NCBI GenBank assembly: GCA_002269645.1
Contig: NIVC01001890.1
Coordinates: forward strand, 1 to 64,000
Origin: Macrostomum lignano
Taxonomy: Eukaryota
Direction: 5' to 3'
Length of the DNA: 64,000 nucleotides
Shown: one piece after another, positions 9,985-61,896 of the stretch
Layout: the number at the start of each line of letters is the position of its first letter
How positions within the stretch are numbered: position 1 is the first letter of the stretch
The notes under the pieces: generated by a model
The model's database searches: none
Told to the model about the DNA's origin: nothing
The model's input: the letters and a program-made list of their open reading frames with translations, nothing else
Translations under genes and position numbers: made by a program

Positions 9985-11905
9985 TCGAGACGGGGTTGAG
10001 GAGTTGGTCGGATAGAGAGAGAATGTACATTGGCGGAGACGGGTGAGGAATTGGTCGGAAAAAAGAGCATGTAAATTGTTGGAGACGGGGTTGAGCAGTT
10101 GGTCGGATAGAGAGAGCATGTACATTGTTGGAGACGGGGTGGGGAATTGGTCGGATAGAGAGAGAATGTACATTGTTGGAGACGGGGTGAGGAATTGGTC
10201 GGATAGAGAGAGAATGTACATTGGCGGATACGGGATGAGGAATTGGTCGGATAGAGAGAGCATGTACATTGTTGGAGACGGGGTGAGGAATTGGTCGGAT
10301 AGAGAGAGAATGTACATTGTTGGAGACGGGGTGAGGAATTGGTCGGATAGAGAGAGAATGTACATTGGCGGAGACGGGATGAGGAATTGGTCGGATAGAG
10401 AGAGAATGTACATTGTTGGAGACGGGGTGAGGAATTGGTCGGATAGAGAGAGAATGTACATTGGCGGATACGGGATGAGGAATTGGTCGGATAGAGAGAG
10501 AATGTACATTGTTGGAGACGGGGTGAGGAATTGGTCGGATAGAGAGAGAATGTACATTGTTGGAGACGGGGTGAGGAATTGGTCGGATAGAGAGAGAATG
10601 TACATTGGCGGAGACGGGATGAGGAATTGGTCGGATAGAGAGAGAATGTACATTGTTGGAGACGGGGTGAGGAATTGGTCGGATAGAGAGAGAATGTACA
10701 TTGGCGGAGACGGGATGAGGAATTGGTCGGATAGAGAGAGAATGTACATTGTTGGAGACGGGGTGAGGAATTGGTCGGATAGAGAGAGAATGTACATTGG
10801 CGGAGACGGGGTGAGGAATTGGTCGGATAGAGAGAGAATGTACATTGTTGGAGACGGGGTGAGGAATTGGTCGGATAGAGAGAGAATGTACATTGGCGGA
10901 GACGGGATGAGGAATTGGTCGGATAGAGAGAGAATGTACATTGGCGGAGACGGGATGAGGAATTGGTCGGATAGAGAGAGAATGTACATTGGCGGAGACG
11001 GGGTGAGGAATTGGTCGGATAGAGAGAGAATGTACATTGTTGGAGACGGGGTGAGGAATTGGTCGGATAGAGAGAGAATGTACATTGGCGGATACGGGAT
11101 GAGGAATTGGTCAGATAGAGAGAGAATGTACATTGTTGGAGACGGGGTGAGGAATTGGTCGGATAGAGAGAGAATGTACATTGGCGGAGACGGGGTGAGG
11201 AATTGGTCGGATAGAGAGAGAATGTACATTGTTGGAGACGGGGTGAGGAATTGGTCGGATAGAGAGAGAATGTACATTGGCGGAGACGGGATGAGGAATT
11301 GGTCGGATAGAGAGAGAATGTACATTGTTGGAGACGGGGTGAGGAATTGGTCGGATAGAGAGAGAATGTACATTGGCGGAGACGGGGTGAGGAATTGGTC
11401 GGATAGAGAGAGAATGTACATTGTTGGAGACGGGGTGAGGAATTGGTCGGATAGAGAGAGAATGTACATTGTTGGAGACGGGGTGAGGAATTGGTCGGAT
11501 AGAGAGAGAATGTACATTGGCGGAGACGGGATGAGGAATTGGTCGGATAGAGAGAGAATGTACATTGGTAGAGACGGGGTGAGGAATTGGTCGGAAAGAG
11601 AGAGAGAGAATGTACATTGGCGGAGACGGGTGAGGAGTTGGTTGGATAGAGAGAGAATGTACATTGTTGGAGACGGGGTTGAGGAGTTAGTCGGATAGAG
11701 AGAGAATGTACATTGTTGGAGACGGGGTTGAGGAGTTAGTCGGATAGAGAGAGAATGTACATTGTTGGAGACGGGTGAGGAGTTGGTCAAATAGAGAGAG
11801 AATGTACATTGTTGGAGACGGTGCGAGGAATTGGTCGGAAAGAGAGAGAATGTACATTGGCGGAGACGGGTGAGGAGTTGGTCGGATAGAGAGCGAGAGA
11901 GAGAG
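9985..11905. repeat. Homogeneous 48-bp minisatellite (~40 copies) GAGGAATTGGTCGGATAGAGAGAGAATGTACATTGTTGGAGACGGGGT
   Basis: Head-to-tail copies with no spacers; two main variants (ATTGTTGG / ATTGGCGG). The 681- and 551-aa ORFs are artefacts. Confidence 0.97.
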
Positions 11906-26193: not shown

Positions 26194-28723
26194 TGCCAGT
26201 GTACATCAACAAGGGGATACATGACTAAGACTGCCACACACAAAGACTACTACAAGCTACTAATCTTCTAGCATTGTTATTCCTCTCATAGGTTCTTTTC
26301 TTGCAGCCTTGTCCTGCTGGCTCTCCTACTTACTCATCTTCTCTCTAGCACCATCTAATAGCACATTGAGTCAAATTTCTCCCTTAGCTCCCCCAAGTGT
26401 GGCAGTCTCGGTGTGTGACAATCTTAGTCCTACACCAAAAAGGGGTAACAATTCTCCTACTATGTATGCCAAAATTTCTTCTAAAAAGGTCATTCGGGTC
26501 AAAAAAGCATTTTAAAAAAGTTAAACTCATTTTGAAATAGTTCTTGGAATTTTTTAATATAAATTATGTAATTTATGTTAAAATTTTCATGCACAAGTCA
26601 CATAGCATAAGTTTGTAGGCCAAAATTTATACACCAAAAATGGCAAGACTTTGTTTGTATGCCAAAAATGGCAAGACTTTGTTTATATGCCAAAAGTGGT
26701 AAGACTTTGTTTGTACACCAAAATTTATACACCGACTTTGAAAGGGGTCATTTGTATGCCGGAAATTCTTGTGTACATGTAACCTTCCAGAGTCTGGCAG
26801 AGATTGCCAAACTGAACTTAAGAATTTTTTACATTAACTATATACATTAATTGGGACTTAGAACTTTAGTCCTATTTGTTGTCTTGGCAATCTCTATACA
26901 CTAAGCTATGTACCAAGAGATATGCTCTTCTATATGCCAATTTGTATACCAATGGTGTTTTTACTAATAGATCCCTCTATATACCAGAAAATTCTGGCAT
27001 ACATATATACCATTTAGATTCTAGATATGGTGTTATTAATTGAATTATTAGGCCTAGTAACTATATAAATGGCCATTTCTTTATTCATTTAATTAATGTT
27101 AAACAAATAGTTATTTTGTTGTTTGTTTACTTAAATTAATAATACTAATTGATTACAGGCATTTTACTTATGTCTTAATTGATTTTAATATCTTACTATA
27201 TTAGTGTAAGGTGTCTGCAACCTAGAAAAAAACTTAAAAAACCTTAAAACAAAAATAACCTGAGATCGGTGAATAAACCTAGATTTGAGGTCATAGAATG
27301 ACAAAGTTTAAGCCAATTGTTTAAGTTATATTTAGACAAATTTCTAACAAATTTTATTTCAACAATTTTCAAATAAAAATCTTACTTTTAGCATTATTTT
27401 TTAATGAAAAACTATTTAATATTAACTTATTAGCTTACTTTTTGTGTTTTGAACAATTTGAACTTATTAAAAAACAATTAATAATCAATAAGTAAGTAAA
27501 TAAGTAAGTAAGTAAGTAAGTAAATTAATAAATAAGAATAAGTCTATATTCTTATTAGCCATATTAGCCATCTGTCTAGCACCCTTATTGTAACCAATGG
27601 CCATTAAGGACATAGCTATAGGGTCACTATGGATATGTCCCCCTTAGAGCTGAAATTTTTTACTGCTTTTATATTTTGCTTCTATCTCTAACATCAGAGA
27701 TATTGATGCCTCTGTCCCCCCATTGATGTAGATCCTGGCTATGTGCCTAATGGCTATTATTGTAGACAGTTCTAATGCAGATTAGCCCCTGGCAATGTAG
27801 ATGCAGTCTGGCATATGAAAAAGAGAATCTAGCATAATTTAGACCTTGGCTTCAATATGATCTAACACATATATTATATTGTACTATATATTATTTAGAT
27901 ATCTCTGTATCTTGATATTTGGTTGTTACATAAATTGTCAATAATTAAAGTTATAAAATTTCTGTTCTTTTTTATAATTTCATGTCTTGTAATGCATTTT
28001 ATTCATTCATTATGTTTTATGTTCATTTTGCCCAAAAAGTTTTTTTGCATGTTTTCTATATAATTATTTATACTTAACTAATATTTGTCCTAAGTATGTT
28101 TTTGCTTTTTTCTCTATTATCTATATAAAAGTAAGTCTTGCAATATTACCAGCTTAGCCAAAACCTGTTTCTATTATAGGATAATATTATTAGCATAGTC
28201 AAACTAAAAGTTTTGTAAAATAAAATGGGTCAAAAGGCAAATATCAAAACCTAATAAGAAAAGGTTTGAAAAAGAAATAAATAAATAAAGAACTTAATAT
28301 TTATAAAAAACTAAAGCATCTAGAAACAACAAAATTTTTAAAGTAAGAAAGACTTACATGATATATAAAGCACTTTTTAAACAAATTTTATAAAACAGTC
28401 ATAAAACAACTATTTATTAATGTATATCAATATAACTTATATTTTCAAACATTTGATTTCTCTTATATAGAAATTAATTTGCATATTTTGATAGTCTATG
28501 TGCATGGGAATTTGATAAAGTAAGCCATTTAATGTTTAACAACTTTAAGATACTTGATATACACACATATATGCATAGAAATATGATCTAAAATCTGTAG
28601 AAATAGCCCCAGTTGGATTGTAAGGCTATATATTGTATTAATGTATTATATAATAGAACCTAATTTATACTGATTAAAACAATTTCAGAGAGAGAAATAA
28701 AAGACAGCATCGAAAGAAAAGTC

Positions 28724-29119
28724 ATGGACGATATTCTAGCAAAGCTTGGTTTAAATATTGATGAATTAAACACACTGCGCATTATCGAACCAGAAGTGTC
28801 AACTGAGTCTACTGATCTCAAAGACAAATGTGGCCAGTTTACCATCACTGTTGAAGACTTTCAACGCTTAGTGTCCAACCTGCTACAGGCTGTGGATGTT
28901 GCTGCTACTGAAGTTGAAAAAGAGAAAATGATACGCATTGGTGCGCTGAACCAATTGAAATGCGTGAGCACCCAGCGTCAGGAGCAGGTGCAGCAGTTGC
29001 AGGCTCAGATATTGGAGAAGCAGGCTAGCTTAGATCGGCTGCAGAAACAGCTTCGCTCGTTGGAGGCTACGGCTAAGGAGCAGAACGATTTTATTGATCA
29101 TTTTCAAATGCAGAAATGA
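28724..29119 (+). CDS. IFT20: Intraflagellar transport protein 20, single coding exon, 131 aa
   Basis: GLNIDELNTLRIIEPEV, LKDKCGQF, VEKEKMIRIGALNQLK, LQAQILEK...LDRL, EQNDFIDHF match IFT20. Confidence 0.95.
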   Translation: MDDILAKLGLNIDELNTLRIIEPEVSTESTDLKDKCGQFTITVEDFQRLVSNLLQAVDVAATEVEKEKMIRIGALNQLKCVSTQRQEQVQQLQAQILEKQASLDRLQKQLRSLEATAKEQNDFIDHFQMQK

Positions 29120-30411: not shown

Positions 30412-31757
30412 TAGTGCTGGCGCCCCTTTGATGCTGGCGCCCCTTGGTGCTGGCGCCTCTTGGTGCTGGCGCCACTTGGTGCTGGCGCCACTTGGTGCTG
30501 GCGCCTCTTGGTGCTGGCGCCCCTTGGTGCTGGCGCCTCTTGGTGCTGGCGCCACTTGGTGCTGGCGCCTCTTGGTGCTGGCGCCTCTTGGTGCTGGCGC
30601 CCCTTTGATGCTGGCGCCTCTTGGTGCTGGCGCCCCTTTGATGCTGGCGCCCCTTGGTGCTGGCGCCCCTTGGTGCTGGCGCCTCTTGGTGCTGGCGCCC
30701 CTTGGTGCTGGCGCCTCTTGGTGCTGGCGCCTCTTGGTGCTGGCGCCCCTTGGTGCTGGCGCCTCTTGGTGCTGGCGCCCCTTGGTGCTGGCGCCTCTTG
30801 GTGCTGGCGCCCCTTGGTGCTGGCGCCACTTGGTGCTGGCGCCTCTTGGTGCTGGCGCCTCTTGGTGCTGGCGCCCCTTTGATGCTGGCGCCCCTTGGTG
30901 CTGGCGCCCCTTGGTGCTGGCGCCTCTTGGTGCTGGCGCCCCTTGGTGCTGGCGCCTCTTGGTGCTGGCGCCCCTTTGATGCTGGCGCCCCTTGGTGCTG
31001 GCGCCCCTTGGTGCTGGCGCCTCTTGGTGCTGGCGCCCCTTGGTGCTGGCGCCTCTTGGTGCTGGCGCCCCTTTGATGCTGGCGCCCCTTGGTGCTGGCG
31101 CCCCTTGGTGCTGGCGCCCCTTGGTGCTGGCGCCCCTTTGATGCTGGCGCCCCTTGGTGCTGGCGCCCCTTGGTGCTGGCGCCTCTTGGTGCTGGCGCCC
31201 CTTGGTGCTGGCGCCTCTTGGTGCTGGCGCCTCTTGGTGCTGGCGCCCCTTGGTGCTGGCGCCTCTTGGTGCTGGCGCCCCTTGGTGCTGGCGCCTCTTG
31301 GTGCTGGCGCCACTTGGTGCTGGCGCCTCTTGGTGCTGGCGCCCCTTTGATGCTGGCGCCCCTTTGATGCTGGCGCCCCTTGGTGCTGGCGCCCCTTGGT
31401 GCTGGCGCCTCTTGGTGCTGGCGCCCCTTGGTGCTGGCGCCACTTGGTGCTGGCGCCTCTTGGTGCTGGCGCCCCTTTGATGCTGGCGCCCCTTGGTGCT
31501 GGCGCCCCTTGGTGCTGGCGCCCCTTGGTGCTGGCGCCCCTTGGTGCTGGCGCCACTTGGTGCTGGCGCCTCTTGGTGCTGGCGCCTCTTGGTGCTGGCG
31601 CCCCTTTGATGCTGGCGCCCCTTGGTGCTGGCGCCCCTTGGTGCTGGCGCCCCTTGGTGCTGGCGCCTCTTGGTGCTGGCGCCCCTTGGTGCTGGCGCCC
31701 CTTGGTGCTGGCGCCTCTTTGTGCTGGCGCCTCTTGGTGCTGGCGCCTCTTGGTGCT
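30412..31757. repeat. GC-rich 16-bp minisatellite GGTGCTGGCGCC(T/C)CTT (~84 copies)
   Basis: Direct tandem copies with a TTTGATGC variant; generates all the GAPAPRGASTK ORFs. Confidence 0.97.
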
Positions 31758-32267
31758 GAGGCAACTTTAGTCCTATTCATCTTGAAAAAATATCGTTTAG
31801 GCTTCATTTCTTAGAATGCTTTTTTGTTAATCTACTACCACGAAATTGTTATTATTTATTTGTTTCTATTTTGTAGAGAAATCGCCTCTACCTCACCTGT
31901 GTCTGTTGCTCATCGAGTTATTTATTAAACGAAGCGACAGGTTTGAAAATGTTTTTAATATATTGAAAACAAAATTATTCTGCAATAATTATTCAATGAT
32001 TGACAACTAGGATAGTTATAGTTTAGTTAGGATATTTTAGATTGTTTATTTACAATTTTTTTCTCAATTTTACCCGCGCCACCCCGAAACAGCTGCTCAT
32101 ATTTTTGCAGACAGCTAACTGGTTGCAATGCTGTTGGATCGTTAATTCGAAATTCGTTTCGTCGAAAAATTCGGGCCACGTGACAAAACCAATAATTATG
32201 ACTTTTATTTAGAAAACTGTTTCGCTTCTAACACACACACCCTCGTTTTTTTAATTCCATATTTCAG

Positions 32268-32771
32268 ATGTCGCTCTCTTCAGACTCGATGAAGGCTGGC
32301 AAGTTTGCCTACAAGACCTGCGACTTAGGCTGTCACGATGTGTGCGACCTGCTATTAACCTCCATGACTAAATTGCAGAAATTTGACAAACCAATCCGTG
32401 GCCGATTTCGTCCGCAAATGCGACGCGAGGCCAGGCCGTTTCTGGACCGCATGCTGGTTAATAATTGCCTCCGGCGGCTGTGCGACATCATGACTAAGGA
32501 GGCTGGATTAGCCGATGAAGATGTCAGTAGGAAGCGTCCTGTTGAGGAGGCCCAGTCTCGCAGTGACACTTATGAAAGCGAATGCTCAATTGAAACTAAG
32601 AAGATTTGCCTGTCTAATGACAAAAATAATCATACTGATAACAGTAACCATGGTAACAGCAAATTTCAGCATCGACGCTTAAACTCCCTAGTATTGGTGA
32701 CTGAGAATTACCAGCCGGTCCGACTGACCCAGCATCTTCGCCATCGTCTTTGGAGGAGAAGAAGAACATGA
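32268..32771 (+). CDS. Small protein with CxxGCHDxC + IER/SERTA-like motif (paralog A)
   Basis: 167-aa ORF with ATG directly after a TTTCAG acceptor; 22/55 ungapped identities to ORF 34746-35093; upstream CACGTG and CCAAT boxes (~32177-32194). C-terminal frame uncertain. Confidence 0.6.
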   Translation: MSLSSDSMKAGKFAYKTCDLGCHDVCDLLLTSMTKLQKFDKPIRGRFRPQMRREARPFLDRMLVNNCLRRLCDIMTKEAGLADEDVSRKRPVEEAQSRSDTYESECSIETKKICLSNDKNNHTDNSNHGNSKFQHRRLNSLVLVTENYQPVRLTQHLRHRLWRRRRT

Positions 32772-33037
32772 AGAAGAGAGCCGGTGGCAACAACAAATTG
32801 GGAAGAACTCGACGTAGGCGGCTTCAACGATTGCGTCAGCGTCTGCGCCAGCGTCAACTGAGGGAGCTGGTTGGCGGGAGGGAAATCTGACTAATGTAAA
32901 CAATTGCCCTATTTTAATGACGATGTGTTAATAGTTGGGTGTCTGCACATTTCTTTTGTCTTTGAGTATAACCATTGGCTTGTAAATCTTGATTTTATGC
33001 ATCATACGATATTTGGCTTTTAATTGATCATTTAACC

Positions 33038-33557
33038 CAGGGGTCGGCAAACTCTCTATCCGACACTCGGGGGTCCTTTGAAACTTCATAATAGCAATCC
33101 GTTCAAGGTTTGTCTCTTCTCAGCTCTCTTCTCAATTTCATCTCCTCTCCCCTCTCCCCTGGTCCTCGAGGTAAAAAAGTTTGCCTTTTTTATTAGAGGC
33201 AGGGGGTTGTGTGCACCCTGGCGCAATTTAAGCGACATAGGCACACAACCGGCGAGAGGCATTACTGCCCATTCCGCCGACTCCCCTGAGCAGGCACACA
33301 AGCGCGCGGATACGTACGCAGGCACACACTCACACAGGAGTGTACAGCGGCCCTAACTTTATCAATTATTAGGCATGTACACTTCACTGCGCCTTGGGCG
33401 GTTGGCTCTCAAGGCCGTTAATTGCACGAGCAGAGCCAAGCCGAGATTCCAATTCAGCCCCAAATTAATGTGACTGCACTTGGAATCGAGCCTGGGTCGC
33501 TGGCACACCAGAGCCTGCGCTACCGCTGGGCTACGGCCCCCCTTTTGCCGACCCCTA
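33038..33557. mobile_element. hAT-Charlie-like MITE
   Basis: TIR CAGGGGTCGGCAAACT (33038-33053) / TTTGCCGACCCCTA (33544-33557). Degenerate 8-bp TSD ATTTAACC / AGCTAACC (6/8). Confidence 0.7.
33361..33541 (-). mobile_element. tRNA-derived SINE (~180 bp) inserted just inside the MITE TIR
   Basis: Minus strand GGGGGCCGTAGCCCAGCGGTAGCG (A box) ... GGCTCGATTCC (B box), AT-rich tail; flanked by a short AAAG duplication (33357-33360 / 33542-33545). Confidence 0.65.
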
Positions 33558-33829
33558 AGCTAACCCAATGTGTCAGCTTGTGTTTGGTTATGCAAATCAT
33601 GCTTTCAATATAATTCTTATTGTATTTTAAAGTTTTCTGCTAACTACAGCATTAACTTGTAGTAGTTTAACTGTCAAATTTTTTGTATTGGATTGTAATC
33701 AATATTCATAAATAAAAAATGCGCTGTAAAAAGATTTTGTCTGTATGAATTTTAACATTTGCTGTTGAGTTTTAATTTTTTTTTATTTTTTACATTACAG
33801 ATCAATATTTAGTCCTAGTAGCATAAAAC

Positions 33830-34585
33830 GGAGGTCAAGGAGTCAGTTTTAAGAGGGAGGTCAAGGAGTCAGTTTTAAGAGGGAGGTCAAGGGGTCAGTT
33901 TTAAGGGGGGTCAATGGTTCAGTTCTAAGAGGTATTAGGTGGTCAGTTCTAAGAAGGAGTTCAAAGGGCCAGTTTTACAAAGGTGTGAATGGAGTCAGTT
34001 CTAAGAAAGCCGAGGGGTCAATGGAGTCAGTTCTAAGAGGGCCGAGGGGTCAATGGAGTCAGTTCTAAGAGGGCCGAGGGGTCAATGGATTCAGTTCTAA
34101 GAGGGGTCAATGGAGTCAGTTCTAAGAGGGCCGAGGGGTCAATGGAGTCAGTTCTGAGAGGGGTCAATGGAGTCAGTTCTAAGAGGGCCGAGGGGTCAAT
34201 GGAGTCAGTTCTAAGAGGGGTCAATGGAGTCAGTTCTGAGAGGGGTCAATGGGGTCAGTTCTGAGAGGGGTCAATGGAGTCAGTTCTGAGAGGAGTCAAT
34301 GGAGTCATTTCTGAGAGGGGTCAATGGAGTCAGTTCTGAGAGGGGTCAATGGAGTCAGTTCTAAGAGGGGTCAATGGAGTCAGTTCTGAGAGGGGTCAAT
34401 GGAGTCAGTTCTGAGAGGGGTCAATGGGGTTAGTTCTAAGAGGGGTCAATGGAGTCAGTTCTGAGAGGGGTCAATGGAGTCAGTTCTGAGAGGGGTCAAT
34501 GGAGTCAGTTCTGAGAGGAGTCAATGGAGTCAGTTCTGAGAGGGGTTAATGGAGTCAGTTCTGAGAGGGGTCAATGGAGTCAGCC
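33830..34585. repeat. 25-bp minisatellite GGGGTCAATGGAGTCAGTTCT(G/A)AGA
   Basis: Direct tandem copies, degenerate at the left end. Confidence 0.95.
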
Positions 34586-34745
34586 TTTCGAATGGTAAAG
34601 AAGGCCAGAACATTTATGTTGTTTGTAATTTACAGTATTAGATTATTAGATATTTGTGTTTTATGTGAATAAACTATTATTAAATACATATACACAAAAT
34701 ATTTTCCAAAAATAAATGCATGATCACATTAATTAAAAGTTCAAC

Positions 34746-35093
34746 ATGGACTCTTCATCCGTTAAAAATGGTGCGTCTGCTTCTAGTAAGAGTGGTGACC
34801 CAGCCACCAGCCTAGTGAGCAATAGTCTATGGCCAAACTGCCCCAACGGCTGTCACGACGCCTGTTCCCTAGCCGCCCTATCGGTGCACAAAGCCCAAAT
34901 TGCTGGCGTGTCTCTGCCTGGTAGATTTCGAATCACTATGCGCCGGGTGCACGGTTCTCTGCATCAGCAGTTGCTGTTAAATCGCTCCGTACGCTGGCTT
35001 TGTCAGCGTCTGTTGTTGAGCGAATCGTCTGAAGACTCGACCTCGTCTCATCAGGAGTCTAACGATTGCGGATCTACTTCGTCTGGTTGTTGA
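34746..35093 (+). CDS. Small protein with CxxGCHDxC + IER/SERTA-like motif (paralog B)
   Basis: 115-aa ORF; DACSLAALSVHKAQ...GSLHQQLLLNRSVRWL resembles the IER-family N-terminal motif; ungapped similarity to ORF 32268-32771. Confidence 0.6.
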   Translation: MDSSSVKNGASASSKSGDPATSLVSNSLWPNCPNGCHDACSLAALSVHKAQIAGVSLPGRFRITMRRVHGSLHQQLLLNRSVRWLCQRLLLSESSEDSTSSHQESNDCGSTSSGC

Positions 35094-37044: not shown

Positions 37045-37428
37045 ATGCCCATGGCTGAAGGCATTGAGAAACGCTTCCAAGCGGAGGTAGAGAAATTGAA
37101 AGCTCTGCACGCTGAGCTAAGCAAAAGTGTACAAGCTGTACAGAAGCTGGAATCGCAAATGCAGGAGAACAAGTCGGTGCAAGAGGAGATGGAGCTACTG
37201 GGTTCCGATGCCGTCATCTACAAGCTCGAAGGTCCCGTACTAGTTAAACAGGACACCGCGGAAGCGTTGCAAAATGTTGGCAAACGAATCGGCTACATTA
37301 AAGAGGAATCGAAGCGTCACGAAACTCAAATTAAAGATTTGGAGAAGAAGCGTGAAGAGCTTCAATCTGCGCTGGCCCGACTGCAGCAGCAGTTTCAGCA
37401 GGCGCAAGTTAAAGCGGCTGCTAGATAA
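37045..37428 (+). CDS. PFDN6: Prefoldin subunit 6, single coding exon (start may be 37051)
   Basis: KLESQMQENKSVQEEM, IYKLEGPVLVKQD, A.QNVGKRIGYI..E.KR match prefoldin beta subunit 6. Confidence 0.95.
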   Translation: MPMAEGIEKRFQAEVEKLKALHAELSKSVQAVQKLESQMQENKSVQEEMELLGSDAVIYKLEGPVLVKQDTAEALQNVGKRIGYIKEESKRHETQIKDLEKKREELQSALARLQQQFQQAQVKAAAR

Positions 37429-38454: not shown

Positions 38455-41400
38455 ATGGATCCAATCCAATGCGAACATCTAGTAGCTTCGGCCGCGGCCG
38501 AGGAGCGAACCTGTCCAGTTTGTCTAGAAGAGATCGACTGCGCCAGAGTGCTGGACTGCGGACACTGCATGTGCGACACCTGCGCTGTCCGTTATTGTAG
38601 AAATCTACTTGGTAGAAAGCGACCTACTATTAGTAGTCTGCTAGTTGTTGGTCCGGTTGCTTGTCCGAAATGTCGCGACGTTAGTCTGGTAGCGTTGGAC
38701 TCGGCTAAGTCTTTGGTTGGCCTGCCGGAGACTGGGAAACTGACCGCTCTTGTGTCGGTTTGTCAAGGATTTGTCAACAATCCCAGTCTGTTTCTTGGAA
38801 TTGAAGAGGACGTGACGGAGGATTGCGAAGAAGAACTGAGCGACGGTGAAGGCGGCAGAATTACTGGCGACGGTGATCTGGAGGCTAGGTAGGTTTTATT
38901 ACACTTGCAATGGTATATGTTTTCTATTGTCTTGGATCTATAGACAGACAAGCTCTCTAACAGTGATCTATAGACACTAGCAGGCTCTTTAACAGTGATC
39001 TATAGACAGGCGGGCTCTCTAACAGTGATCTATAGACATGCAGGCTCTTTACCAGCGATCTATGGGCACTAATAACAGGCTCTTTAACAGTGATCTATAG
39101 ACACTAGCAGGCTCTTTAACAGTGATCTATAGACACTAACAGGCTCTTTAACAGTGATCTATAGACACTAGCAGGCTCTTTAACAGTGATCTATAGACAG
39201 GCGGGCTCTCTAACAGTGATCTATAGACATGCAGGCTCTTTACCAGCGATCTATGGGCACTAATAACAGGCTCTTTAACAGTGATCTATAGACACTAGCA
39301 GGCTCTTTAAAAGTGATTTATAGACAGGCGGGCTCTCTAACAGTGATCTATAGACACTAGCAGGCTCTTTAAAAGTGATCTATAGACAGGCGGGCTCTCT
39401 AACAGTGATCTATAGACACTAGCAGGCTCTCTAACAGTGATCTATAGACACTAACAGTCTCTTTAACAGTGATCTATAGACACTAGCAGGCTCTTTAAAA
39501 GTGATCTATAGACAGGCGGGCTCTCTAACAGTGATCTATAGACACTAGCAGGCTCTCTAACGGTGATCTATAGACACTAAGTCTCTTTAACAGTGATCTA
39601 TAGACACTAGCAGGCTCTTTAAAAGTGATCTATAGACAGGCGGGCTCTCTAACAGTGATCTATAGACACTAGCAGGCTCTCTAACGGTGATCTATAGACA
39701 CTAAGTCTCTTTAACAGTGATCTATAGACACTAGCAGGCTCTTTAAAAGTGATCTATAGACATGCAGGCTCTTTACCAGTGATCTATAGACACTAATAAC
39801 AGGCTCTTTAACAGTGATCTATAGACATACATGCTCTCTAACAGTGATCTATGGACGGGTGGTGATCTACAGACAAATATCTTCTATTAAAGTTATCTAA
39901 AAACTTGCTCTCTAACAAATTTGATCCATAGACAGGAATATTCTCTGACAGAGGCCTATAGAGGCGGTGCATTCTGAATTAGCAGTAGTATTCTTTATGC
40001 ACAAATTTTCAAAGCCATTCACCTCGCAACCAGACTGCAGGCCCGTCTCCAGTCGGCCGGCCAGGAGCTGTCCAATCTGCGTCAGGAGTCGCGCAATCTG
40101 CGCCAAGAAATTCGAGCCCAAGCTTCAATGGCCGCCGCTGAAACCGAAACGGAAACCGAAAATTCGAACGAGGCAGAAGCGATCGATTCGCTGGTTCGAC
40201 GTCTATCGTCGATTTTCTCCGGCCCAGCCGATCGACTTGTCCGTCGTCAAGAGGCCGCCAGGCTGCGTTTAGAAGCCGCTTGGCTTCGGCTTCGTTGCCT
40301 ACAATTTGCTCGCAGTTGCTATGGCAACGGTTTCCTAGGCAATTTTGCTGAAGCTTGGCGAACTGTTGCTTCAAATTCGGCCGAAGTTAAACGGGCCGCC
40401 GATCCGACTGCTTGGGATGATGCAGCTTTGCAGCTTCGTCGGGACTCTTTTGTTGCTTGGGCAATCGCCGTTGCTAAGGACGCTAGTAAAGATGGTGCCC
40501 TGGATTCTGAGGAGACTGTGACAGCTGCTGTAGCCGCGGCCGCTGCTGCTGCCGCCACTGATAGGTCTGGAGCGGCTGGCGCTACCGGGACCTTGAGTCC
40601 GGTATCAGCTGAAGGTCAAGGACGCATAGTTCAAACTAAACTGCTGTGGCGAGTGGGTCGTGGGGGCGAAGGGCCGCTGGAGTTCCGCTGGCCAGTGCAC
40701 GCTAATTTTGTGTCGAACGATCGCGTGGCCGTCTGCGATAAGAATAACTGCAGGGTGCAGCTGCTGAGCTTGAAGACTGGGGAGTTCATACAGTTTATGG
40801 GCAGCGGCTGCTTGAAGCCGAGGCGGATTCTGCAGGTGAGAACAGAATCAGATGCCTATATTATTGTGTACTTCATCATCCTAAAATCTACAACTCCATA
40901 AACTTTCAGAGTCAAAACGGCAAATTCTACGTTTGCGATGAGAATGCAGCCTGCGTGAAAGTGTTCAACGAGCAGTTGGAGCTGGTTGGCAGACTGGGAG
41001 ATGGCATCTTTCACTGTCCGTCGGGTGAGAGTTGGTGTACTTTTAATTTGGCCTCTGTCGCCCTCCCAGATCATCAGTTCCTGGGCCACCAGCCTCCCAG
41101 ATCCTCAGTTTCTGGGCCAGCCTCCAGATCCTCAGTTGCTGGGCCAGCCTCCCAGACCCTCAGTTGCTGGGCCAGCCTCCCAGACCCTCAGTTGCTGGGC
41201 CAGCCTCCAGATCCTCAGTTGCTGGGCCAGCCTCCCTGGTCCTCAGTTGCTGGGCCAGCCTCCCAGATCCTCAGTTGCTGGGCCAGCCTCCCTGGTCCTC
41301 AGTTGCTGGGCCAGCCTCCCAGACCCTCAGTTGCTGGGCCAGCCTCCCAGACCCTCAGTTGCTGGGCCAGTCTCCCAAATCCCAGTTTCTGGACCAGTCT

Positions 41401-43056
41401 CCCAGATCCTCAGTTTCTGGGCCAGCCTCCAGATCCTCAGTTTCTGGGCCAGCCTCCAGATCCTCAGTTGCTGGGCCAGCCTCCCAGACCCTCAGTTGCT
41501 GGGCCAGCCTCCCAGACCCTCAGTTGCTGGGCCAGTCTCCCAAATCCCAGTTTCTGGACCAGTCTCCCAGATCCTCAGTTTCTGGGCCAGCCTTCCAGAT
41601 TCTCGTTGCTGGGCCGGGCCAGCCCCTCAATTTCCATTCCCAGGCATTTAATAAAGTCACCCAGAAGAATCAATGTCATTCAAACTAACCGCAGGCATCG
41701 CCGAGACACGCAACGGTCACATAGTGCTGTCAGATCTGGACCACGCATTCGTGGTGGTCATCAGCCCGGACACCGGGGAGATTGTGCGCAAATTCCACAC
41801 CCGCCTGGCAGGCGATGACTATATTCCGTCGCCGCATTTCGTATCGTTGGACGATGACGATTTCATATTGGTGTCCGACAGTTTGAATAATACTGTTAAG
41901 GTAGATTCTCTATGCGATTGTGTACTTACTGAATGCACGATTTATCAACAGACTGGCTGTCAGACAGAAACAGCAGACAGCCAGGCGGACACAGCAAACA
42001 GGCAGGCACAGCAGATAGGCAGGCACAGCAGATAGGCAGACACACATCAGATAGGCAGACACACATCAGATAGGCAGACACAGCAGACAGACAGACAGGC
42101 AGACACAGCAGATAGGCAGGCAGACACAGCAGACAGACAGGCAGACACAGCAGACAGGCAGACAGCAGACAATTAGACAGACAGTCAGGGAGACACAACA
42201 GAGAGCAAACAGACACAGCAGACTGTCAGACAGACAGAGAGACTGGCAGACAGCAGACAATTAGACAGACAGGCAGGGAGACACAACAGAGGGCAGACAG
42301 ACACAGCAGACTGTCAGAGAGACTGGCAGACAGCAGACAATTAGACAGACAGGCAGGGAGACACAACAGAGGGCAGACAGACACAGCAGACTGTCAGACA
42401 GACAGGCAGGAAGACACAACAGAGACAGACACAGAGGGCAAACAGACACAGCAGACTGTCAGACAGACAGGCAGGAAGACACAACAGAGACAGACACAGA
42501 GGGCAGACAGACACAGCAGACTGTCAGACAGGCAGAGAGACACAACAGAGACAGACACAGAGGGCAAACAGACACAGCAGACTGTCAGACAGACAGGCAG
42601 GGAGACACAACAGAGACAGACACAGCAGACTGTCAAACAGACAGGCAGGGAGACACAACAGAGACAGACACAGAGTACAAACAGACACAGCAGGCTGTCA
42701 CAGCAGACTCCCTTCTACCGCAACAGATCTTCGATCCGCGCGGCCGAATCTCCGGCCGAATCCGCGGCTTTAAATGTCCCCGCGGCCTGGCCGTGGACCA
42801 CCGCGGCAACCTGCTAGTAGTGAACGCCGACACCCACTCGGTGTCGCTGTTCACCAGCCTTGGCAAGCATCTGCAGCTAGTGCTGTCAGCTCGAGACGGG
42901 CTGAACTTTCCAATGTCGGCCGCCTTCGACAAGGACCGACACCAGCTGTTGTTGACGCAGTGCAACGTCTATGGCCAGTGCGAGGTTCTGCTGTACCAGA
43001 TGGAGTATCTGGACAACGAGGTAGACGACGTCAAGGACGCCATCAAAGACGTTTAA
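38455..43056 (+). CDS. RING - coiled coil - NHL repeat E3 ubiquitin ligase (TRIM-NHL-like, no clear B-box), 5 exons, ~645 aa
   Basis: Exons 38455-38888, ~39983-40835, 40910-41024, 41695-41900, 42727-43056; phases 2/0/1/0 are consistent. C3HC4 RING CPVC..CGH.MC..C..CPKC; NHL blades LEFRWP..VAVCDKNNCRVQLL, FYVCDENAACVKVF, FHCPSGIA, SPHFVS..ILVSDSLNNTVKIF, FKCPRGLAVD, LNFPMSAAFD. The exon 2 acceptor is ambiguous (tandem NAG). Confidence 0.85.
38935..39855. repeat. ~32-bp minisatellite AACAGTGATCTATAGACACTAGCAGGCTCTTT in RING-NHL intron 1
   Basis: Direct tandem copies with higher-order variants. Confidence 0.95.
41070..41600. repeat. 28-bp minisatellite CTGGGCCAGCCTCCCAGATCCTCAGTTG in RING-NHL intron 3
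   Basis: Direct tandem copies; same family as 48060-48330. Confidence 0.93.
41945..42705. repeat. Degenerate CAGA/GACA-derived compound satellite in RING-NHL intron 4
   Basis: Recurrent GACACAGCAGACTGTCAGACAGACAGGCAG units. Confidence 0.85.
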
Positions 43057-55456: not shown

Positions 55457-58400
55457 ATGGCATCTCCTCGAACGCCGCGCACTTCAACTACCGACCCTAT
55501 ACGGGATCAGATAACCAGCAGGCGAACCATTGAAAAGAAGGCCCTAGAATTCGACATCACCTTGCACGACGTGTCGTTCAACTATGCCGGTCGATATTTT
55601 CTAAGATTAGCCGTGCAATCATCGTTCACCTCGGATCTAAGCGGCCTCCGAGTTCGATCCGGCGGCCCAACCGGACGGCCAACTCGAGGTTTCCGATTCG
55701 GCGCGGAAGCTCGAACTGAAGTGACCGACCAGTTGCAACAAGACGAGGTTTTTCACATGCAAGACGCTCGATTCTCATTTTACATGCCAGTTGGATTTAA
55801 TAAGAACGATATAAAGCATGACGTATTCCTGCTGATTGAGGCGTTCGACATCAGCGAGACCACCGCCCAATTCCGACGTATTGGCGAAGCCAAAGTGGCC
55901 ATTTATCCGCGAACAGACGTTGAAATGAACTTCGATCTAGAGATTGGAGACCCCGTCTATCGGTTGACTATGAAGGCTCCGATTTTGAGGATCAATACTC
56001 AGGTTAGGGATTTTTTACGTCTTTGACTGCTTGCTTATGGAAGTTGAAAAAGGTGGTTGCTATGGGGGTTGTAGTCTAATGGTTAGAGCGTCGGAATCAC
56101 GACTTAAAGGTCGGAGGTTCGATTCTCGACCCACTCGGAACAATTTGTGTCCTTGAGCAAGACACTTAACTCTGAATTGTTTCAGAGATCACCCAGTTGT
56201 AAAATGAGGGGAGGCTTCATAAGACTGAAATTTCACAACGCCAAAAATTCTGCATGGTCCTTGTTATTTTAAGTTTTCTACGACGTGAAATTTCAGTCTG
56301 ATGAAGTTTCGGCTTTAGGAAATTTCGGTCTTGTGAAGGCAGGTGTCTTTTGGCTTTAGGAAATTTCGGTCTTGTGAAGGCAGGTGTCTTTTGGCTTTAG
56401 GAAATTTCGGTCTTGTGAAGGCAGGTGTCTTTTGGCTTTAGGAAATTTCGGTCTTGTTAAGGCAGGTGTCTTTTGGCGTTATGAAATTTCGGTCTTGTGA
56501 AAGCGACCCTAAAATGAGTACCAGCATTAGCTGGGGTAATTGAGGGTGTGTTTGGCGACCCCCCCCCCCAGTCCGTGGACTGAACAGCCGTACGCAGCCT
56601 TCAGATGCGCCGCGCAATAGCTGCAGCTGAGCTGTCGGTTGCACATCTGCCCATTAGGGCAGGTGAAATCAATTATTATTTTTGTTATTAGTGCTATAGG
56701 GGTTGCGAAAAATCAGTTGCTAGTAGGCGATCAAAGAAGTATTAAGCTGTTAACTTATTTGATGAGGAGCAAGTAGCATTTTGACAACCAAGAAAACGCA
56801 CAGCGCAGCAAAATCCGTTCGCTTACTCCAGACAGCATACTAAGTACATTGGCAATGCGAGCTACAAATTAGTTGCTACAAGCTCGCATCTCCCACATCC
56901 AACAATCCAATTTAGGATCATCTCCACATGCACTGCGGCTCGCTTAATTTCACCTGCCAACTCAGCGAAGCCTGGCCAATCGAAGTGGACGAAGATGGTC
57001 CCCCTGAGCCGCAGCCTCGGCCGCCGGTTCGCAAGAAGCCGCCGGAACAGTTGAAGCCGCCGCCTCAGCCGGCTCAGAAGCAGCCGCCGGAACGGAAGAC
57101 ACCGAGAGGTGACCACGCTCCGCCGCAGAGGCTTCGAGAGGATCCCAACTTGGAGCATCGGTCAGTTGATCCGCTTCAGGGCGGCTGGCGGCTGGTGTCT
57201 GACGAAGGCAAAGAGGAGGTCACGGTGATTGTGCACGGCGGTAACGACATGAAGCATCCTAGTAAGCATAGGATGCCAAGGACCTACGTGACTGTGTGAG
57301 TGTCTTTCTAATGTTGAAGTTGAATCGAATTTCACGAAGGTTGACTATGGTTTGGTTAGCGATTAGAAAATTAGCAAATGTAATAACATGTAGGTATCAG
57401 TGTCAGATAGCGATAATGGTGAGTGTCAGTTAGTGATAACAGTGAGTGTCAGTTAGCGATAACAGTGAGTGTCAGTTAGCGATAACAGTGAGTGTCAGTT
57501 AGTGATAACAATGAGTGTCAGTTAGCGATAACAGTGAGTGTCAGTTAGTGATAACAGTGAGTGTCAGTTAGCGATAATGGTGAGTGTCAGTTAGTGATAA
57601 CAGTGAGTGTCAGTTAGTGATAACAGTGAGTGTCAGTTAGCGATAACAGTCAGTGTCAGTTAGCGATAACAGTGAGTGTCAGTTAGCGATAATGGTGAGT
57701 GTCAGTTAGCGATAATGGTGAGTGTCAGTTAGCGATAACAGTGAGTGTCAGTTAGCGATAACAGTGAGTGTCAGTTAGCGATAACAGTCAGTGTCAGTTA
57801 GCGATAATGGTGAGTGTCAGTTAGCGATAATGGTGAGTGTCAGTTAGCGATAATGGTGAGTGTCAGTTAGCGATAATGGTGAGTGTCAGTTAGCGATAAT
57901 GGTGAGTGTCAGTTAGCGATAATGGTGAGTGTCAGTTAGCGATAATGGTGAGTGTCAGATAGCGATAACAGTGATTGTCAGATAGTGATAACAGTGATTG
58001 TCAGATAGCGATAACAGTGAGTGTCAGTTAGCGATAATGGTGAGTGTCAGTTAGCGATAATGGTGAGTGTCAGTTAGCGATAATGGTGAGTGTCAGATAG
58101 CAATAACAGTGAGTGTCAGTTAGTGATAACAGTGATTGTCAGATAGCGATAACAGTGAGTGTCAGTTAGCGATAATGGTGAGTGTCAGTTAGCGATAATG
58201 GTGAGTGTCAGTTAGCGATAATGGTGAGTGTCAGTTAGCGATAACAGTGAGTGTCAGTTAGCGATAATGGTGAGTGTCAGTTAGCGATAATGGTGAGTGT
58301 CAGTTAGCGATAACAGTGAGTGTCAGTTAGCGATAATGGTGAGTGTCAGTTAGCGATAACAGTGAGTGTCAGTTAGCGATAATGGTGAGTGTCAGTTAGC

Positions 58401-61400: not shown

Positions 61401-61896
61401 TTCCTCTCCATCTCACCCTCTCCATCTCCCTCTCCATCTCCGTCTCCATCTCCCTCTCGATCTCTCCCTCTCCATTAACCGTATTTGTATTTATAGTACA
61501 TAATTTGTAGTATATGGAAATGTGGACGAAAATCCATATATTCAAAACATTTTCTGTTTCTTACAGTTCAACGGAGAGCAGGGTCGCTTCTTTGCTACAT
61601 TAATTCGCAAGCAATCCAAGTTGCCCAGCGACTCCGGCATCGGCATCAACTACAAAGCTTTGGAGGCGTGTCTGGTTGCCGTGCGGCACCCGTTGCAGAA
61701 TCCTGCCGGAGCCCTCATCGCTGTTGCCAAGGTGGTCTCGGATTATTACAATTTCGTTAACAGACTGCTGGCGTTTAGGAATTCCGGCCTGGAGCTGACG
61801 ACCGCCCAGTTTCCCAATCCGCATCCGACCACCTTCTTTGTTAGCGACCGCTGGACCGGACAGGGACAGTCCCAGGTAACGGCCTGTCTGTCTGCC

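What the first reader, a model, noticed from the sequence alone, without database searches (positions are those of the whole stretch)
32268..35093. Pair of small paralogs with an ungapped CxxGCHDxC + IER/SERTA-like motif
Seen: ORFs 32268-32771 and 34746-35093 align without gaps over 55 aa with 22 identities: CDLGCHDVCDLLLTSMTKLQKFDKPIRGRFRPQMRREARPFLDRMLVNNCLRRLC vs CPNGCHDACSLAALSVHKAQIAGVSLPGRFRITMRRVHGSLHQQLLLNRSVRWLC. The rest is Ser/acidic low complexity. Established: L..S..K...L...LL.N..LR is the core of the IER2/IER5 and SERTA motifs, which bind PP2A-B55 or cyclin-CDK. Inference: the added CxxGCHDxC, GRFRxxMRR insert and terminal C suggest a metal-binding or redox-sensitive variant family that gene predictors would easily miss.
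Basis: partly seen in the sequence, partly recalled or inferred. Interest (0 to 1): 0.7.

Follow-up and report, generated by a model that had tools for sequence, protein, structure and literature searches.

The report
Flatworm paralog pair with SERTA-like hairpin
Two neighbouring small genes of the flatworm Macrostomum lignano share a conserved 55-residue cysteine-capped helix-loop-helix domain found in no other organism searched; it faintly resembles the IER/SERTAD hairpin that regulates the phosphatase PP2A-B55, but that link is not proven.

Summary
ORFs 32268-32771 and 34746-35093 align without gaps over 58 aa (22 identities, E=1e-11).

- **Source and annotation.** The window is Macrostomum lignano contig NIVC01001890.1. 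Copies of both ORFs elsewhere in the assembly are already annotated from RNA-seq as hypothetical proteins Mlig010213g3 and g4. They lie in one transcriptional unit with IFT20 (g1) and a prefoldin subunit (g5).
- **Selection.** Between homeologous copies the shared domain shows 6 synonymous and 1 non-synonymous change. The tails show 5.5 and 17.5 (Fisher p=0.007). These are real, constrained genes, not transposon debris.
- **ORF1 end.** ORF1's stop at 32771 comes from a 1-bp C-run difference seen only in this contig. The two other copies encode 206 aa with a strongly basic tail.
- **Relatives.** An exhaustive profile search of 1.84 billion proteins found no real relative.
- **IER/SERTA reading.** This is only partly supported. 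Native sequences miss Pfam SERTA and IER. Family-level hhalign probability is 7-16% for SERTA and 0.4% for IER. However, paralog 1 alone reaches 62%. With its extra loop removed it hits only PF06031 (20.9 bits, cutoff 25). Paralog 2 matches both published IER/SERTAD helix consensus motifs. The loop is about 10 residues longer than in known members.
- **Not tested.** Metal binding and B55 binding.

The parts
32262..32267 (+). TTTCAG splice acceptor directly before the ATG of gene 1; candidate spliced-leader trans-splice site
   Evidence: Sequence. It matches the [T/C]TNCAG motif reported at M. lignano SL acceptor sites (PMC8629364). It is conserved in L002. That it is actually used is inferred.
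32268..32771 (+). ORF1 as it reads in the window (167 aa); window copy of Mlig010213g3, truncated by a 1-bp indel
   Evidence: The copy in L002 is PAA88178.1 (206 aa).
32727..32728 (+). C-run (CCC here, CCCC in the two other copies) whose missing base shifts the frame and creates the stop at 32769-32771
   Evidence: Three-way alignment of window, L002 and L003.
32729..32892 (+). Continuation of the gene 1 reading frame as used in the intact copies: PASSPSSLEEKKNMKKRAGGNNKLGRTRRRRLQRLRQRLRQRQLRELVGGREI*. Basic, NLS-like tail.
   Evidence: The frame is open in the window and 4 of 53 aa differ from L002.
32319..32483 (+). Conserved domain of paralog 1 (C18-C72). Contains Cx3CHx2C (C18, C22, H23, C26), helix 1 LLLTSMTKL (32349-32375), basic loop GRFRPQMRR (32400-32426), helix 2 LDRMLVNNCLRRLC (from 32442) and closing C72.
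   Evidence: AF2 secondary structure gives helices 23-38 and 49-80 at low confidence. Against L002: 170/174 nt identical, 3 synonymous and 1 non-synonymous change.
34746..35093 (+). ORF2 (115 aa); window copy of Mlig010213g4
   Evidence: The copy in L002 is PAA88179.1.
34839..35003 (+). Conserved domain of paralog 2 (C32-C86). Contains Cx3CHx2C, helix 1 LAALSVHKA (34869-34895), loop GRFRITMRR (34920-34946), helix 2 HQQLLLN (34962-34982) and closing C86.
   Evidence: Against L002: 171/174 nt identical, 3 synonymous and 0 non-synonymous changes.
28691..29119 (+). Upstream neighbour IFT20 homolog (its copy in L002 is Mlig010213g1); same transcriptional unit
37069..37428 (+). Downstream neighbour, Prefoldin_2-family subunit (its copy in L002 is Mlig010213g5); same transcriptional unit

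Best explanation
**Shown.** These are two tandem, single-exon, transcribed genes of Macrostomum lignano (window copies of Mlig010213g3 and g4). They arose by an old duplication (dS saturated). Each encodes a small protein built around one constrained domain of about 55 residues, flanked by fast-evolving tails that look disordered by composition.

**Inferred.**
- The domain is a helix-loop-helix hairpin of the IER/SERTAD kind, the module that IER5 uses to sit on the B55 subunit of PP2A.
- Helix 1 carries the L-x-x-x-S-x-x-K face. Helix 2 carries the L-[LV]-x-N...R face. The loop is about 10 residues longer and carries an invariant basic GRFRxxMRR.
- The lineage-specific Cx3CHx2C cap before helix 1 and the invariant Cys at the end of helix 2 would lie next to each other at the open end of such a hairpin. 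They most likely clamp it through a zinc ion or a disulfide.
- The proteins would then act as small nuclear adaptors or inhibitors of PP2A-B55, or of another partner bound in the same way. Paralog 1 would be brought into the nucleus by its basic C-terminal tail.
For: **Real genes**
- The GenBank models are PAA88178.1 and PAA88179.1. They come from an RNA-seq-derived annotation that excludes non-coding and repeat-overlapping transcripts (PMC5730564).
- g1, g3, g4 and g5 share one transcriptional-unit prefix.
- The same gene order is kept in three assembly copies.

**Constraint**
- Domains: 6 synonymous and 1 non-synonymous change. Tails: 5.5 and 17.5. Fisher p=0.007.

**Hairpin**
- AF2 places two helices over the two motif halves, at low confidence.

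**IER/SERTAD likeness**
- P2 matches both published consensus motifs in the right order. About 1 shuffle in 200,000 does so.
- P1-only hhalign against SERTA is 62%, P=7e-5. The reversed control gives 0.2%.
- With the loop excised, P1 hits only PF06031 (E=2.9e-4).
- A local SERTA HMM, taking the best score over all deletions, gives P1 22.1 bits against a null maximum of 11.4 in 400 shuffles.
- Residues invariant between the paralogs (L28, S32, K35, L63, N65, R69) fall on IER5 I10, S14, K17, L35, S37 and R41. Four of these (I10, S14, K17, L35) are among the published B55-contact mutations. The mapping is my own.
- IER5 needs its hairpin plus an NLS. Intact P1 has a basic tail.
Against: - Native sequences hit no Pfam family, even at E<=10.
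- Family-level hhalign is only 7-16% for SERTA and 0.4% for IER.
- P2 fails the HMM test (21/400 and 33/300 shuffles reach its score).
- P1 lacks the basic first residue of the helix 2 motif and has T at one hydrophobic position of helix 1.
- The spacing from the helix 1 Lys to the helix 2 motif is 24 residues, not 14.
- The most conserved parts of the domain (the Cys cap and GRFRxxMRR) have no counterpart in IER/SERTAD.
- AF2 confidence is poor (pLDDT 41 and 49), and Foldseek against the PDB returns nothing.
- The resemblance was picked out by eye from many ORFs, so the nominal P-values overstate significance.
- No zinc or B55 evidence of any kind.
Confidence: 0.42

Rival explanations
1. A lineage-specific (orphan) domain unrelated to IER/SERTAD. 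It would be a small Cys/His-stabilised helical module with its own basic GRFRxxMRR surface, binding some other partner such as nucleic acid or another protein. The SERTA-like helix 2 would be convergence between amphipathic helices.
For: - No homolog in 5.8 billion (word-indexed) or 1.84 billion (exhaustive HMMER) proteins, apart from spurious bacterial repeat proteins.
- No Pfam or PDB sequence hit.
- Family-level hhalign is 7-16%.
- The strongest conservation lies in features absent from IER/SERTAD.
- The loop is 10-12 aa longer.
Against: - The direction-specific similarity of P1 to SERTA (62% against 0.2% reversed).
- The Pfam-wide unique sub-threshold hit after loop excision.
- The exact match of P2 to two independently published consensus motifs.
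- The coincidence of paralog-invariant residues with IER5 interface residues.
Confidence: 0.4
2. The ORFs are not functional protein-coding genes. They would be chance or decaying ORFs inside a long polycistronic or non-coding transcript, or transposon-derived fragments.
For: - The window copy of ORF1 carries a frameshift.
- There is no homolog outside the species.
- The region is packed with minisatellites that generate many spurious ORFs.
- No expression table I could search names these genes.
Against: - Two paralogs retain an ungapped 58-aa alignment despite saturated dS.
- There are no frame disruptions in the domain in any of the six gene copies.
- The synonymous to non-synonymous ratio in the domain is 6:1, against 5.5:17.5 in the tails.
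- Only two copies exist per locus and none elsewhere in the window.
- The annotation pipeline removed repeat-overlapping transcripts.
Confidence: 0.06
3. An intermembrane-space or secreted disulfide-rich helical hairpin of the twin-CX3C / CX9C (small Tim or CHCH) type.
For: Helix-loop-helix prediction with Cys residues near the start of helix 1 and the end of helix 2.
Against: - The Cys spacing is Cx3Cx3C ... single C, not twin CX3C or CX9C.
- Only one invariant Cys lies in helix 2.
- No Pfam hit to Tim10/DDP or CHCH families at E<=10.
- No signal peptide-like N-terminus, and a nuclear-type basic tail in P1.
Confidence: 0.04

Closest known systems
SERTA motif proteins (Pfam PF06031: SERTAD1-4, CDCA4, Drosophila Taranis)
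   Same: - Predicted helix-loop-helix.
- Helix 1 carries S-x-x-K-[L/A], preceded by hydrophobic residues.
- Helix 2 carries L-[LV]-x-N-x-x-R-[RW]-L. P1's MLVNNCLRRL compares with SERTAD2's VLINNMLRRI.
- P1 alone scores hhalign 62% and reaches 20.9 bits on PF06031 after loop excision.
- Small proteins with acidic/Ser-rich tails.
   Different: - Below Pfam's cutoff, and no hit at all with native sequences.
- The loop is 10-12 residues longer and carries an invariant GRFRxxMRR.
- An N-terminal Cx3CHx2C cap and a closing Cys are added.
- The cyclin-A-binding, PHD-bromo-binding and C-terminal domains that define TRIP-Br/Taranis proteins are absent.
- P2 is not recognised by SERTA profiles.
IER family N-terminal hairpin (Pfam PF05760; IER5-N50, PDB 8UO5 chain D)
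   Same: - A helical hairpin whose helix 1 S and K are essential for B55 binding, and whose helix 2 motif is [H/K/R]xxL[L/I]x[S/N]. P2 matches both.
- A basic loop containing R-G.
- A need for an NLS elsewhere in the protein; intact P1 has a basic tail.
   Different: - hhalign probability is 0.4%, no better than shuffles (41/300).
- No PF05760 hit.
- The hairpin is not at the extreme N-terminus.
- The loop is longer.
- A Cys cap is present.
Zinc-knuckle / treble-clef-like or disulfide-stapled helical hairpins (for example twin-CX3C small Tims, CHCH proteins)
   Same: Cysteines positioned at the open end of a predicted helical hairpin: a short Cys-x3-Cys element running into the first turn of a helix, plus a distal Cys.
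   Different: The Cys spacing fits none of these families, no family model matches, and metal or disulfide status is unknown.

Membership tests
SERTA (PF06031) | Scores at or above Pfam's gathering threshold (25 bits) on PF06031 | tested here: not met
   Native P1, P2 and the homeolog proteins give no PF06031 hit at E<=10 or E<=1. With 12 loop residues removed, P1 reaches 20.9 bits (E=2.9e-4) and P2 gives nothing.
SERTA (PF06031) | Profile-profile similarity to an alignment of bona fide SERTA motifs | tested here: inconclusive
   - Family against SERTA: 16% (P=0.0016) on a narrow alignment, 6.9% (P=0.005) on a broad one.
- P1 alone 62% (P=7e-5); P2 alone 6%; reversed control 0.2%.
- 0 of 300 column shuffles reach the observed score.
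SERTA / TRIP-Br / Taranis proteins | Accompanying conserved domains: cyclin-A-binding homology, PHD-bromo-binding, C-terminal motif (Calgaro et al. 2002, as cited in PMC10705542) | tested here: not met
   The proteins are 115 and 206 aa. Inspection of the sequences shows no such segments. The P1 tail is basic rather than ending in the acidic C-terminal motif.
IER/SERTAD hairpin superfamily (Cao et al., PMC10491241) | Helix 1 consensus [I/L][aliphatic/aromatic]x[aliphatic]S[aliphatic]xK[aliphatic] | tested here: met
   P2 LAALSVHKA is an exact match. P1 LLLTSMTKL matches except for T at one aliphatic position.
IER/SERTAD hairpin superfamily (Cao et al., PMC10491241) | Helix 2 consensus [H/K/R]xxL[L/I]x[S/N] | tested here: inconclusive
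   P2 HQQLLLN is an exact match. P1 LDRMLVN fails the first position and has M for L and V for L/I.
IER/SERTAD hairpin superfamily | Short loop: 14 residues from the helix 1 Lys to the first residue of the helix 2 motif, in the IER2, IER5 and SERTAD1-3/CDCA4 sequences aligned (one fewer in SERTAD4-type) | tested here: not met
   The spacing is 24 in both paralogs. hhalign places a 10-12-residue insertion there.
IER/SERTAD hairpin superfamily | Confidently predicted or solved helical hairpin fold | tested here: inconclusive
   AF2 gives helices in the right places, but at pLDDT 41 (full length) and 48.6 (domain) with a two-sequence alignment. Foldseek against the PDB gives 0 hits.
IER/SERTAD hairpin superfamily | Binds the B55 subunit of PP2A | not testable with these tools
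   No complex prediction or experiment was available.
IER (PF05760) | Match to PF05760, or profile similarity to the IER N-terminal domain | tested here: not met
   No Pfam hit. hhalign gives 0.4%, P=0.14, and 41 of 300 shuffles do as well.
Zinc- or disulfide-stabilised mini-domain | At least four invariant Cys/His ligands in a fixed spacing | tested here: met
   C18, C22, H23, C26 and C72 (P1 numbering) are invariant in both paralogs and in all six gene copies.
Zinc- or disulfide-stabilised mini-domain | Bound metal or a disulfide demonstrated | not testable with these tools
   Needs recombinant protein.
Twin CX3C / CX9C hairpins | Two CX3C or two CX9C pairs, one per helix | tested here: not met
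   The pattern is Cx3Cx3C before and in helix 1, with a single invariant Cys in helix 2.

The most novel reading that the evidence does not exclude
A flatworm-restricted branch of the IER/SERTAD hairpin superfamily in which the B55-binding hairpin is locked by a Cys3His/Cys zinc site or a reversible disulfide. PP2A-B55 inhibition would then be metal- or redox-gated, a regulatory mode not described for any B55 regulator.
Probability: 0.12. Interest if true: 0.65.

Novelty: new variant of a known kind. Interest (0 to 1): 0.36.

Why it matters
If the IER/SERTAD reading is right, it would extend the recently proposed superfamily of B55-binding hairpins to a flatworm, a group not represented in the vertebrate and fly members used here. 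It would also show that the loop tolerates a 10-residue basic insertion and an added Cys clamp. That bears on how PP2A-B55 recognises helical partners and might be redox- or metal-controlled.

M. lignano is a transgenic, RNAi-amenable regeneration model, so the idea can be tested directly.

If the reading is wrong, this is one more species-restricted orphan gene pair, of modest interest. The practical lessons stand either way. The ORFs are already annotated. One window copy is truncated by a probable assembly indel.

Tried and rejected
- **Word-indexed homolog search with both paralogs.** Only self hits.
- **Exhaustive HMMER profile search of 1.84 billion representatives.** Beyond self, it found only three giant bacterial Ig-like repeat proteins with 7-15 weak repeat matches to YxxCDxGxxxxCD. 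One of them is named, an Ig-like domain protein of Chitinophaga. I judged these spurious summed repeat matches covering only the first third of the profile.
- **PDB sequence search.** Only noise: phospholamban and Ndc80 helices, E>=0.02.
- **Two AF2 runs.** Low confidence, so fold comparison is not meaningful. One Foldseek run against the PDB gave 0 hits.
- **Searches for 'Mlig010213'.** Nothing in the full-text library or in the supplements of four M. lignano papers, so tissue or stem-cell expression remains unknown.
- **Third homolog search, to widen the SERTA profile.** It returned only vertebrate sequences, so no invertebrate SERTA motif could be included.
- **tRNA-derived SINE at 33480-33545.** Not supported by ARAGORN, by Rfam, or by copy number in the window.
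- **dN/dS between the two paralogs.** Uninformative because dS is saturated at about 2.0.
- **Twin-CX3C / CHCH reading.** Rejected on Cys spacing.
Full report
**Observation**

- BLASTP of the pair gives 22 identities in 58 ungapped positions, E=1e-11.
- tblastn of each protein against the whole window finds the other at 6e-8 and 1e-9, and finds no further copy.
- Invariant columns include C18, G21, C22, H23, D24, C26, L28, S32, K35, G45-R48, M51-R53, L63, N65, R69, L71 and C72 in paralog 1 numbering.

**Source and annotation**

Exact look-ups place the window on Macrostomum lignano contig NIVC01001890.1 of assembly Mlig_3_7 (GCA_002269645.1). Window coordinates equal record coordinates.

The window's own proteins are in the protein collection. 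Their 90% clusters contain GenBank entries PAA88178.1 (BOX15_Mlig010213g3, 206 aa) and PAA88179.1 (BOX15_Mlig010213g4, 119 aa) from a second locus.

That GenBank annotation derives from RNA-seq transcripts (PMC5730564):
- Transcriptional units were cut into genes at spliced-leader and poly(A) sites.

The neighbours are an IFT20 homolog upstream (its copy at the second locus is g1, PAA88177.1) and a prefoldin subunit downstream (g5, PAA88180.1), on the same strand. All four share the transcriptional-unit prefix Mlig010213. The two genes are therefore transcribed, apparently within an operon-like unit.

The ATG of gene 1 is directly preceded by TTTCAG (32262-32267). This matches the [T/C]TNCAG motif found at SL trans-splice acceptors in this species (PMC8629364). 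Use of the site is inferred.

The claim that gene predictors would miss these genes is wrong.

**Three copies and a frameshift**

The locus occurs three times in the assembly, with the same gene order:

| Copy | Record | Identity to the window |
|---|---|---|
| Window | NIVC01001890.1 | - |
| L003 | NIVC01000404.1 | 98.4-98.7% |
| L002 | NIVC01000200.1 | about 95% in unique non-coding DNA |

In L002 and L003 gene 1 encodes 206 aa ending in KKNMKKR..GGNNKLGR.RRRRLQRLRQRLRQRQLREL..GREI. The window lacks one C of a CCCC run at 32727/32728. This shifts the frame and creates the stop at 32771. The intact frame remains open in the window up to 32892.

In a long-read assembly this is most simply a homopolymer error. 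A recent null allele is not excluded.

**Selection**

Counts are Nei-Gojobori, window against L002.

| Region | Synonymous | Non-synonymous |
|---|---|---|
| Domain 1 | 3 | 1 |
| Domain 2 | 3 | 0 |
| Remaining coding sequence (pooled) | 5.5 | 17.5 |

- Pooled omega for the two domains is about 0.05. The tails run from about 0.5 to 1.3.
- Fisher p=0.007 for domains against the rest.
- The counts are small but consistent: the shared domain is constrained and the tails drift.
- Between the paralogs dS is saturated (about 2), so the duplication is old.

**Search for relatives**

- A word-indexed search of 5.8 billion proteins with both paralogs found only themselves.
- An exhaustive HMMER profile search of 1.84 billion cluster representatives added only three huge bacterial Ig-like repeat proteins. 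Their many YxxCDNGxPSLCD repeats each match the first third of the profile weakly. I regard these as spurious.
- Pfam gives nothing relevant, even at E<=10.
- The PDB sequence search gives only noise.
- AF2 predicts a helix over HDVCDLLLTSMTKLQK and a long helix over PQMRR...LRRLCDIMTKEAG, but with pLDDT 41. The domain alone gives 48.6.
- Foldseek against the PDB returns nothing.

On present data the family is restricted to M. lignano.

**Testing the IER/SERTA idea**

I gathered real SERTAD2, CDCA4, SERTAD1-like and SERTAD4-like sequences. I also typed human SERTAD1, SERTAD3, CDCA4, IER2 and IER5 from memory. These pass Pfam's thresholds for PF06031 and PF05760. The IER5 N-terminus is identical to PDB 8UO5 chain D.

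hhalign results:

| Query | Target | Probability | P |
|---|---|---|---|
| Four-sequence family | Narrow SERTA alignment | 16% | 0.0016 |
| Four-sequence family | Broad SERTA alignment | 6.9% | 0.005 |
| Four-sequence family | SERTA + IER combined | 7.5% | 0.0047 |
| Four-sequence family | IER | 0.4% | 0.14 |
| Paralog 1 alone | Broad SERTA alignment | 62% | 7e-5 |
| Paralog 2 alone | Broad SERTA alignment | 6% | 0.006 |
| Reversed family | Broad SERTA alignment | 0.2% | 0.39 |

- No column shuffle in 300 reached the SERTA score. For IER, 41 of 300 did.
- With relaxed settings hhalign aligns helix 1 (LLTSMTKL with iSLxKL) and helix 2, with a 10-12-residue insertion between them.
- Removing 12 loop residues makes paralog 1 hit PF06031 as the only one of 24,736 Pfam families (E=2.9e-4, 20.9 bits, below the 25-bit cutoff). 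Paralog 2 still hits nothing.
- That deletion was guided by the alignment, so I repeated the test with a local SERTA HMM, maximising over all deletions of 1-20 residues. Paralog 1 scores 22.1 bits against a null maximum of 11.4 in 400 shuffles. Paralog 2 scores 7.4 bits, reached by 21 of 400 shuffles.

**Published consensus**

Cao et al. solved PP2A/B55alpha with IER5-N50 (PMC10491241):
- IER5-N50 is a helical hairpin.
- By structure comparison, SERTADs are homologs.
- Helix 1 consensus: [I/L][aliphatic or aromatic]x[aliphatic]S[aliphatic]xK[aliphatic].
- Helix 2 consensus: [H/K/R]xxL[L/I]x[S/N].
- The loop is poorly conserved.
- S14, K17 and L30 are essential for binding. I10, R25, K29, H31, K32, L35 and V39 are important.
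- Function needs the hairpin plus an NLS.

Against these motifs:
- Paralog 2 matches both exactly (LAALSVHKA, HQQLLLN), in the right order. About 1 in 200,000 shuffles of its sequence does so.
- Paralog 1 matches helix 1 apart from a Thr (LLLTSMTKL). It matches helix 2 only partly (LDRMLVN).
- On my mapping, with the helix 2 register shifted by the 10 extra loop residues, the paralog-invariant residues L28, S32, K35, L63, N65 and R69 fall on IER5 I10, S14, K17, L35, S37 and R41.
- The same mapping puts C22/C26 and C72 opposite each other at the open end of the hairpin. That is where a zinc ion or a disulfide could clamp it. This is geometric inference, not a result.

**Weighing**

The resemblance is directional. 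It is concentrated in residues that matter in the known family. It is also seen in different ways in the two paralogs.

Against that:
- It is short and fails every formal family threshold.
- It was selected by eye from many ORFs.
- The most conserved parts of the domain (Cx3CHx2C and GRFRxxMRR) are foreign to IER/SERTAD.

I put about 0.42 on a divergent, Cys-clamped IER/SERTAD-type hairpin that binds B55 or a similar partner. I put about 0.40 on an unrelated orphan Cys/His helical domain. The small remainder goes to non-functional ORFs or a mitochondrial CX3C/CX9C-type hairpin.

**Verdict**

- This is a real, already annotated, transcribed and constrained paralog pair, apparently restricted to M. 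lignano.
SERTA-likeness is suggestive. IER-likeness at profile level is not supported. Metal binding is untested.
- Interest is moderate.

Noticed in passing
window 30414-31758: A 16-bp minisatellite (about 83 copies, 59% G+C) creates 380-490-aa pseudo-ORFs in several frames on both strands (APAPRGASTKRRQHQ...). They are not genes. The array lies between IFT20 (g1) and gene 1 (g3), where the transcriptional unit's unlisted 'g2' would fall.
   Followed up: partly
window 33834-34583: A 25-bp (50-bp higher-order) minisatellite lies in the spacer between the two paralogs. The array length differs between assembly copies: 503 gap columns against L002.
   Followed up: partly
window 32727-32728: A one-base C-run difference truncates gene 1 in this contig only. 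L002 and L003 are intact (206 aa). It is probably a homopolymer assembly error.
   Followed up: yes
window 24000-45000; L002 (NIVC01000200.1:364653-385012); L003 (NIVC01000404.1:113225-133584): The whole IFT20-g3-g4-prefoldin-RING/NHL-GOSR2 block is present three times in the assembly. One copy is about 98.5% and one about 95% identical to the window. This is what a recently polyploid genome would give.
   Followed up: partly
window 33480-33545, minus strand: By eye the stretch looks tRNA-like, with A-box and B-box-like motifs. ARAGORN, Rfam at gathering score and Rfam at E<=1 all find nothing, and there is no second copy in the window.
   Followed up: yes
whole window (e.g. 9987-11893, 38935-39856, 57399-58584, 59050-61475): The density of minisatellites is extraordinary: 53 TRF rows at score >=200, with periods of 4 to 172 bp and strong local GC/AT skews. 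Any long ORF in this window needs checking against them.
   Followed up: no
proteins P0005-P0007 (metagenomic and Chitinophaga): Giant bacterial Ig-like repeat proteins with YQVCDNGxPSLCDTAxL repeats matched the N-terminal Cys motif of the profile. The matches are summed weak repeat hits, not homology.
   Followed up: partly
SERTA and IER alignments built here: hhalign of the SERTA alignment against IER2/IER5 gave 46.5% (P=2e-4), with an ungapped register from the helix 1 Lys to helix 2. This fits the published structural claim that the two families are related.
   Followed up: partly
window 38455-43056: The downstream 628-aa multi-exon gene has weak RING and faint NHL Pfam hits (TRIM-like). 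Several minisatellites lie within its span.
   Followed up: no
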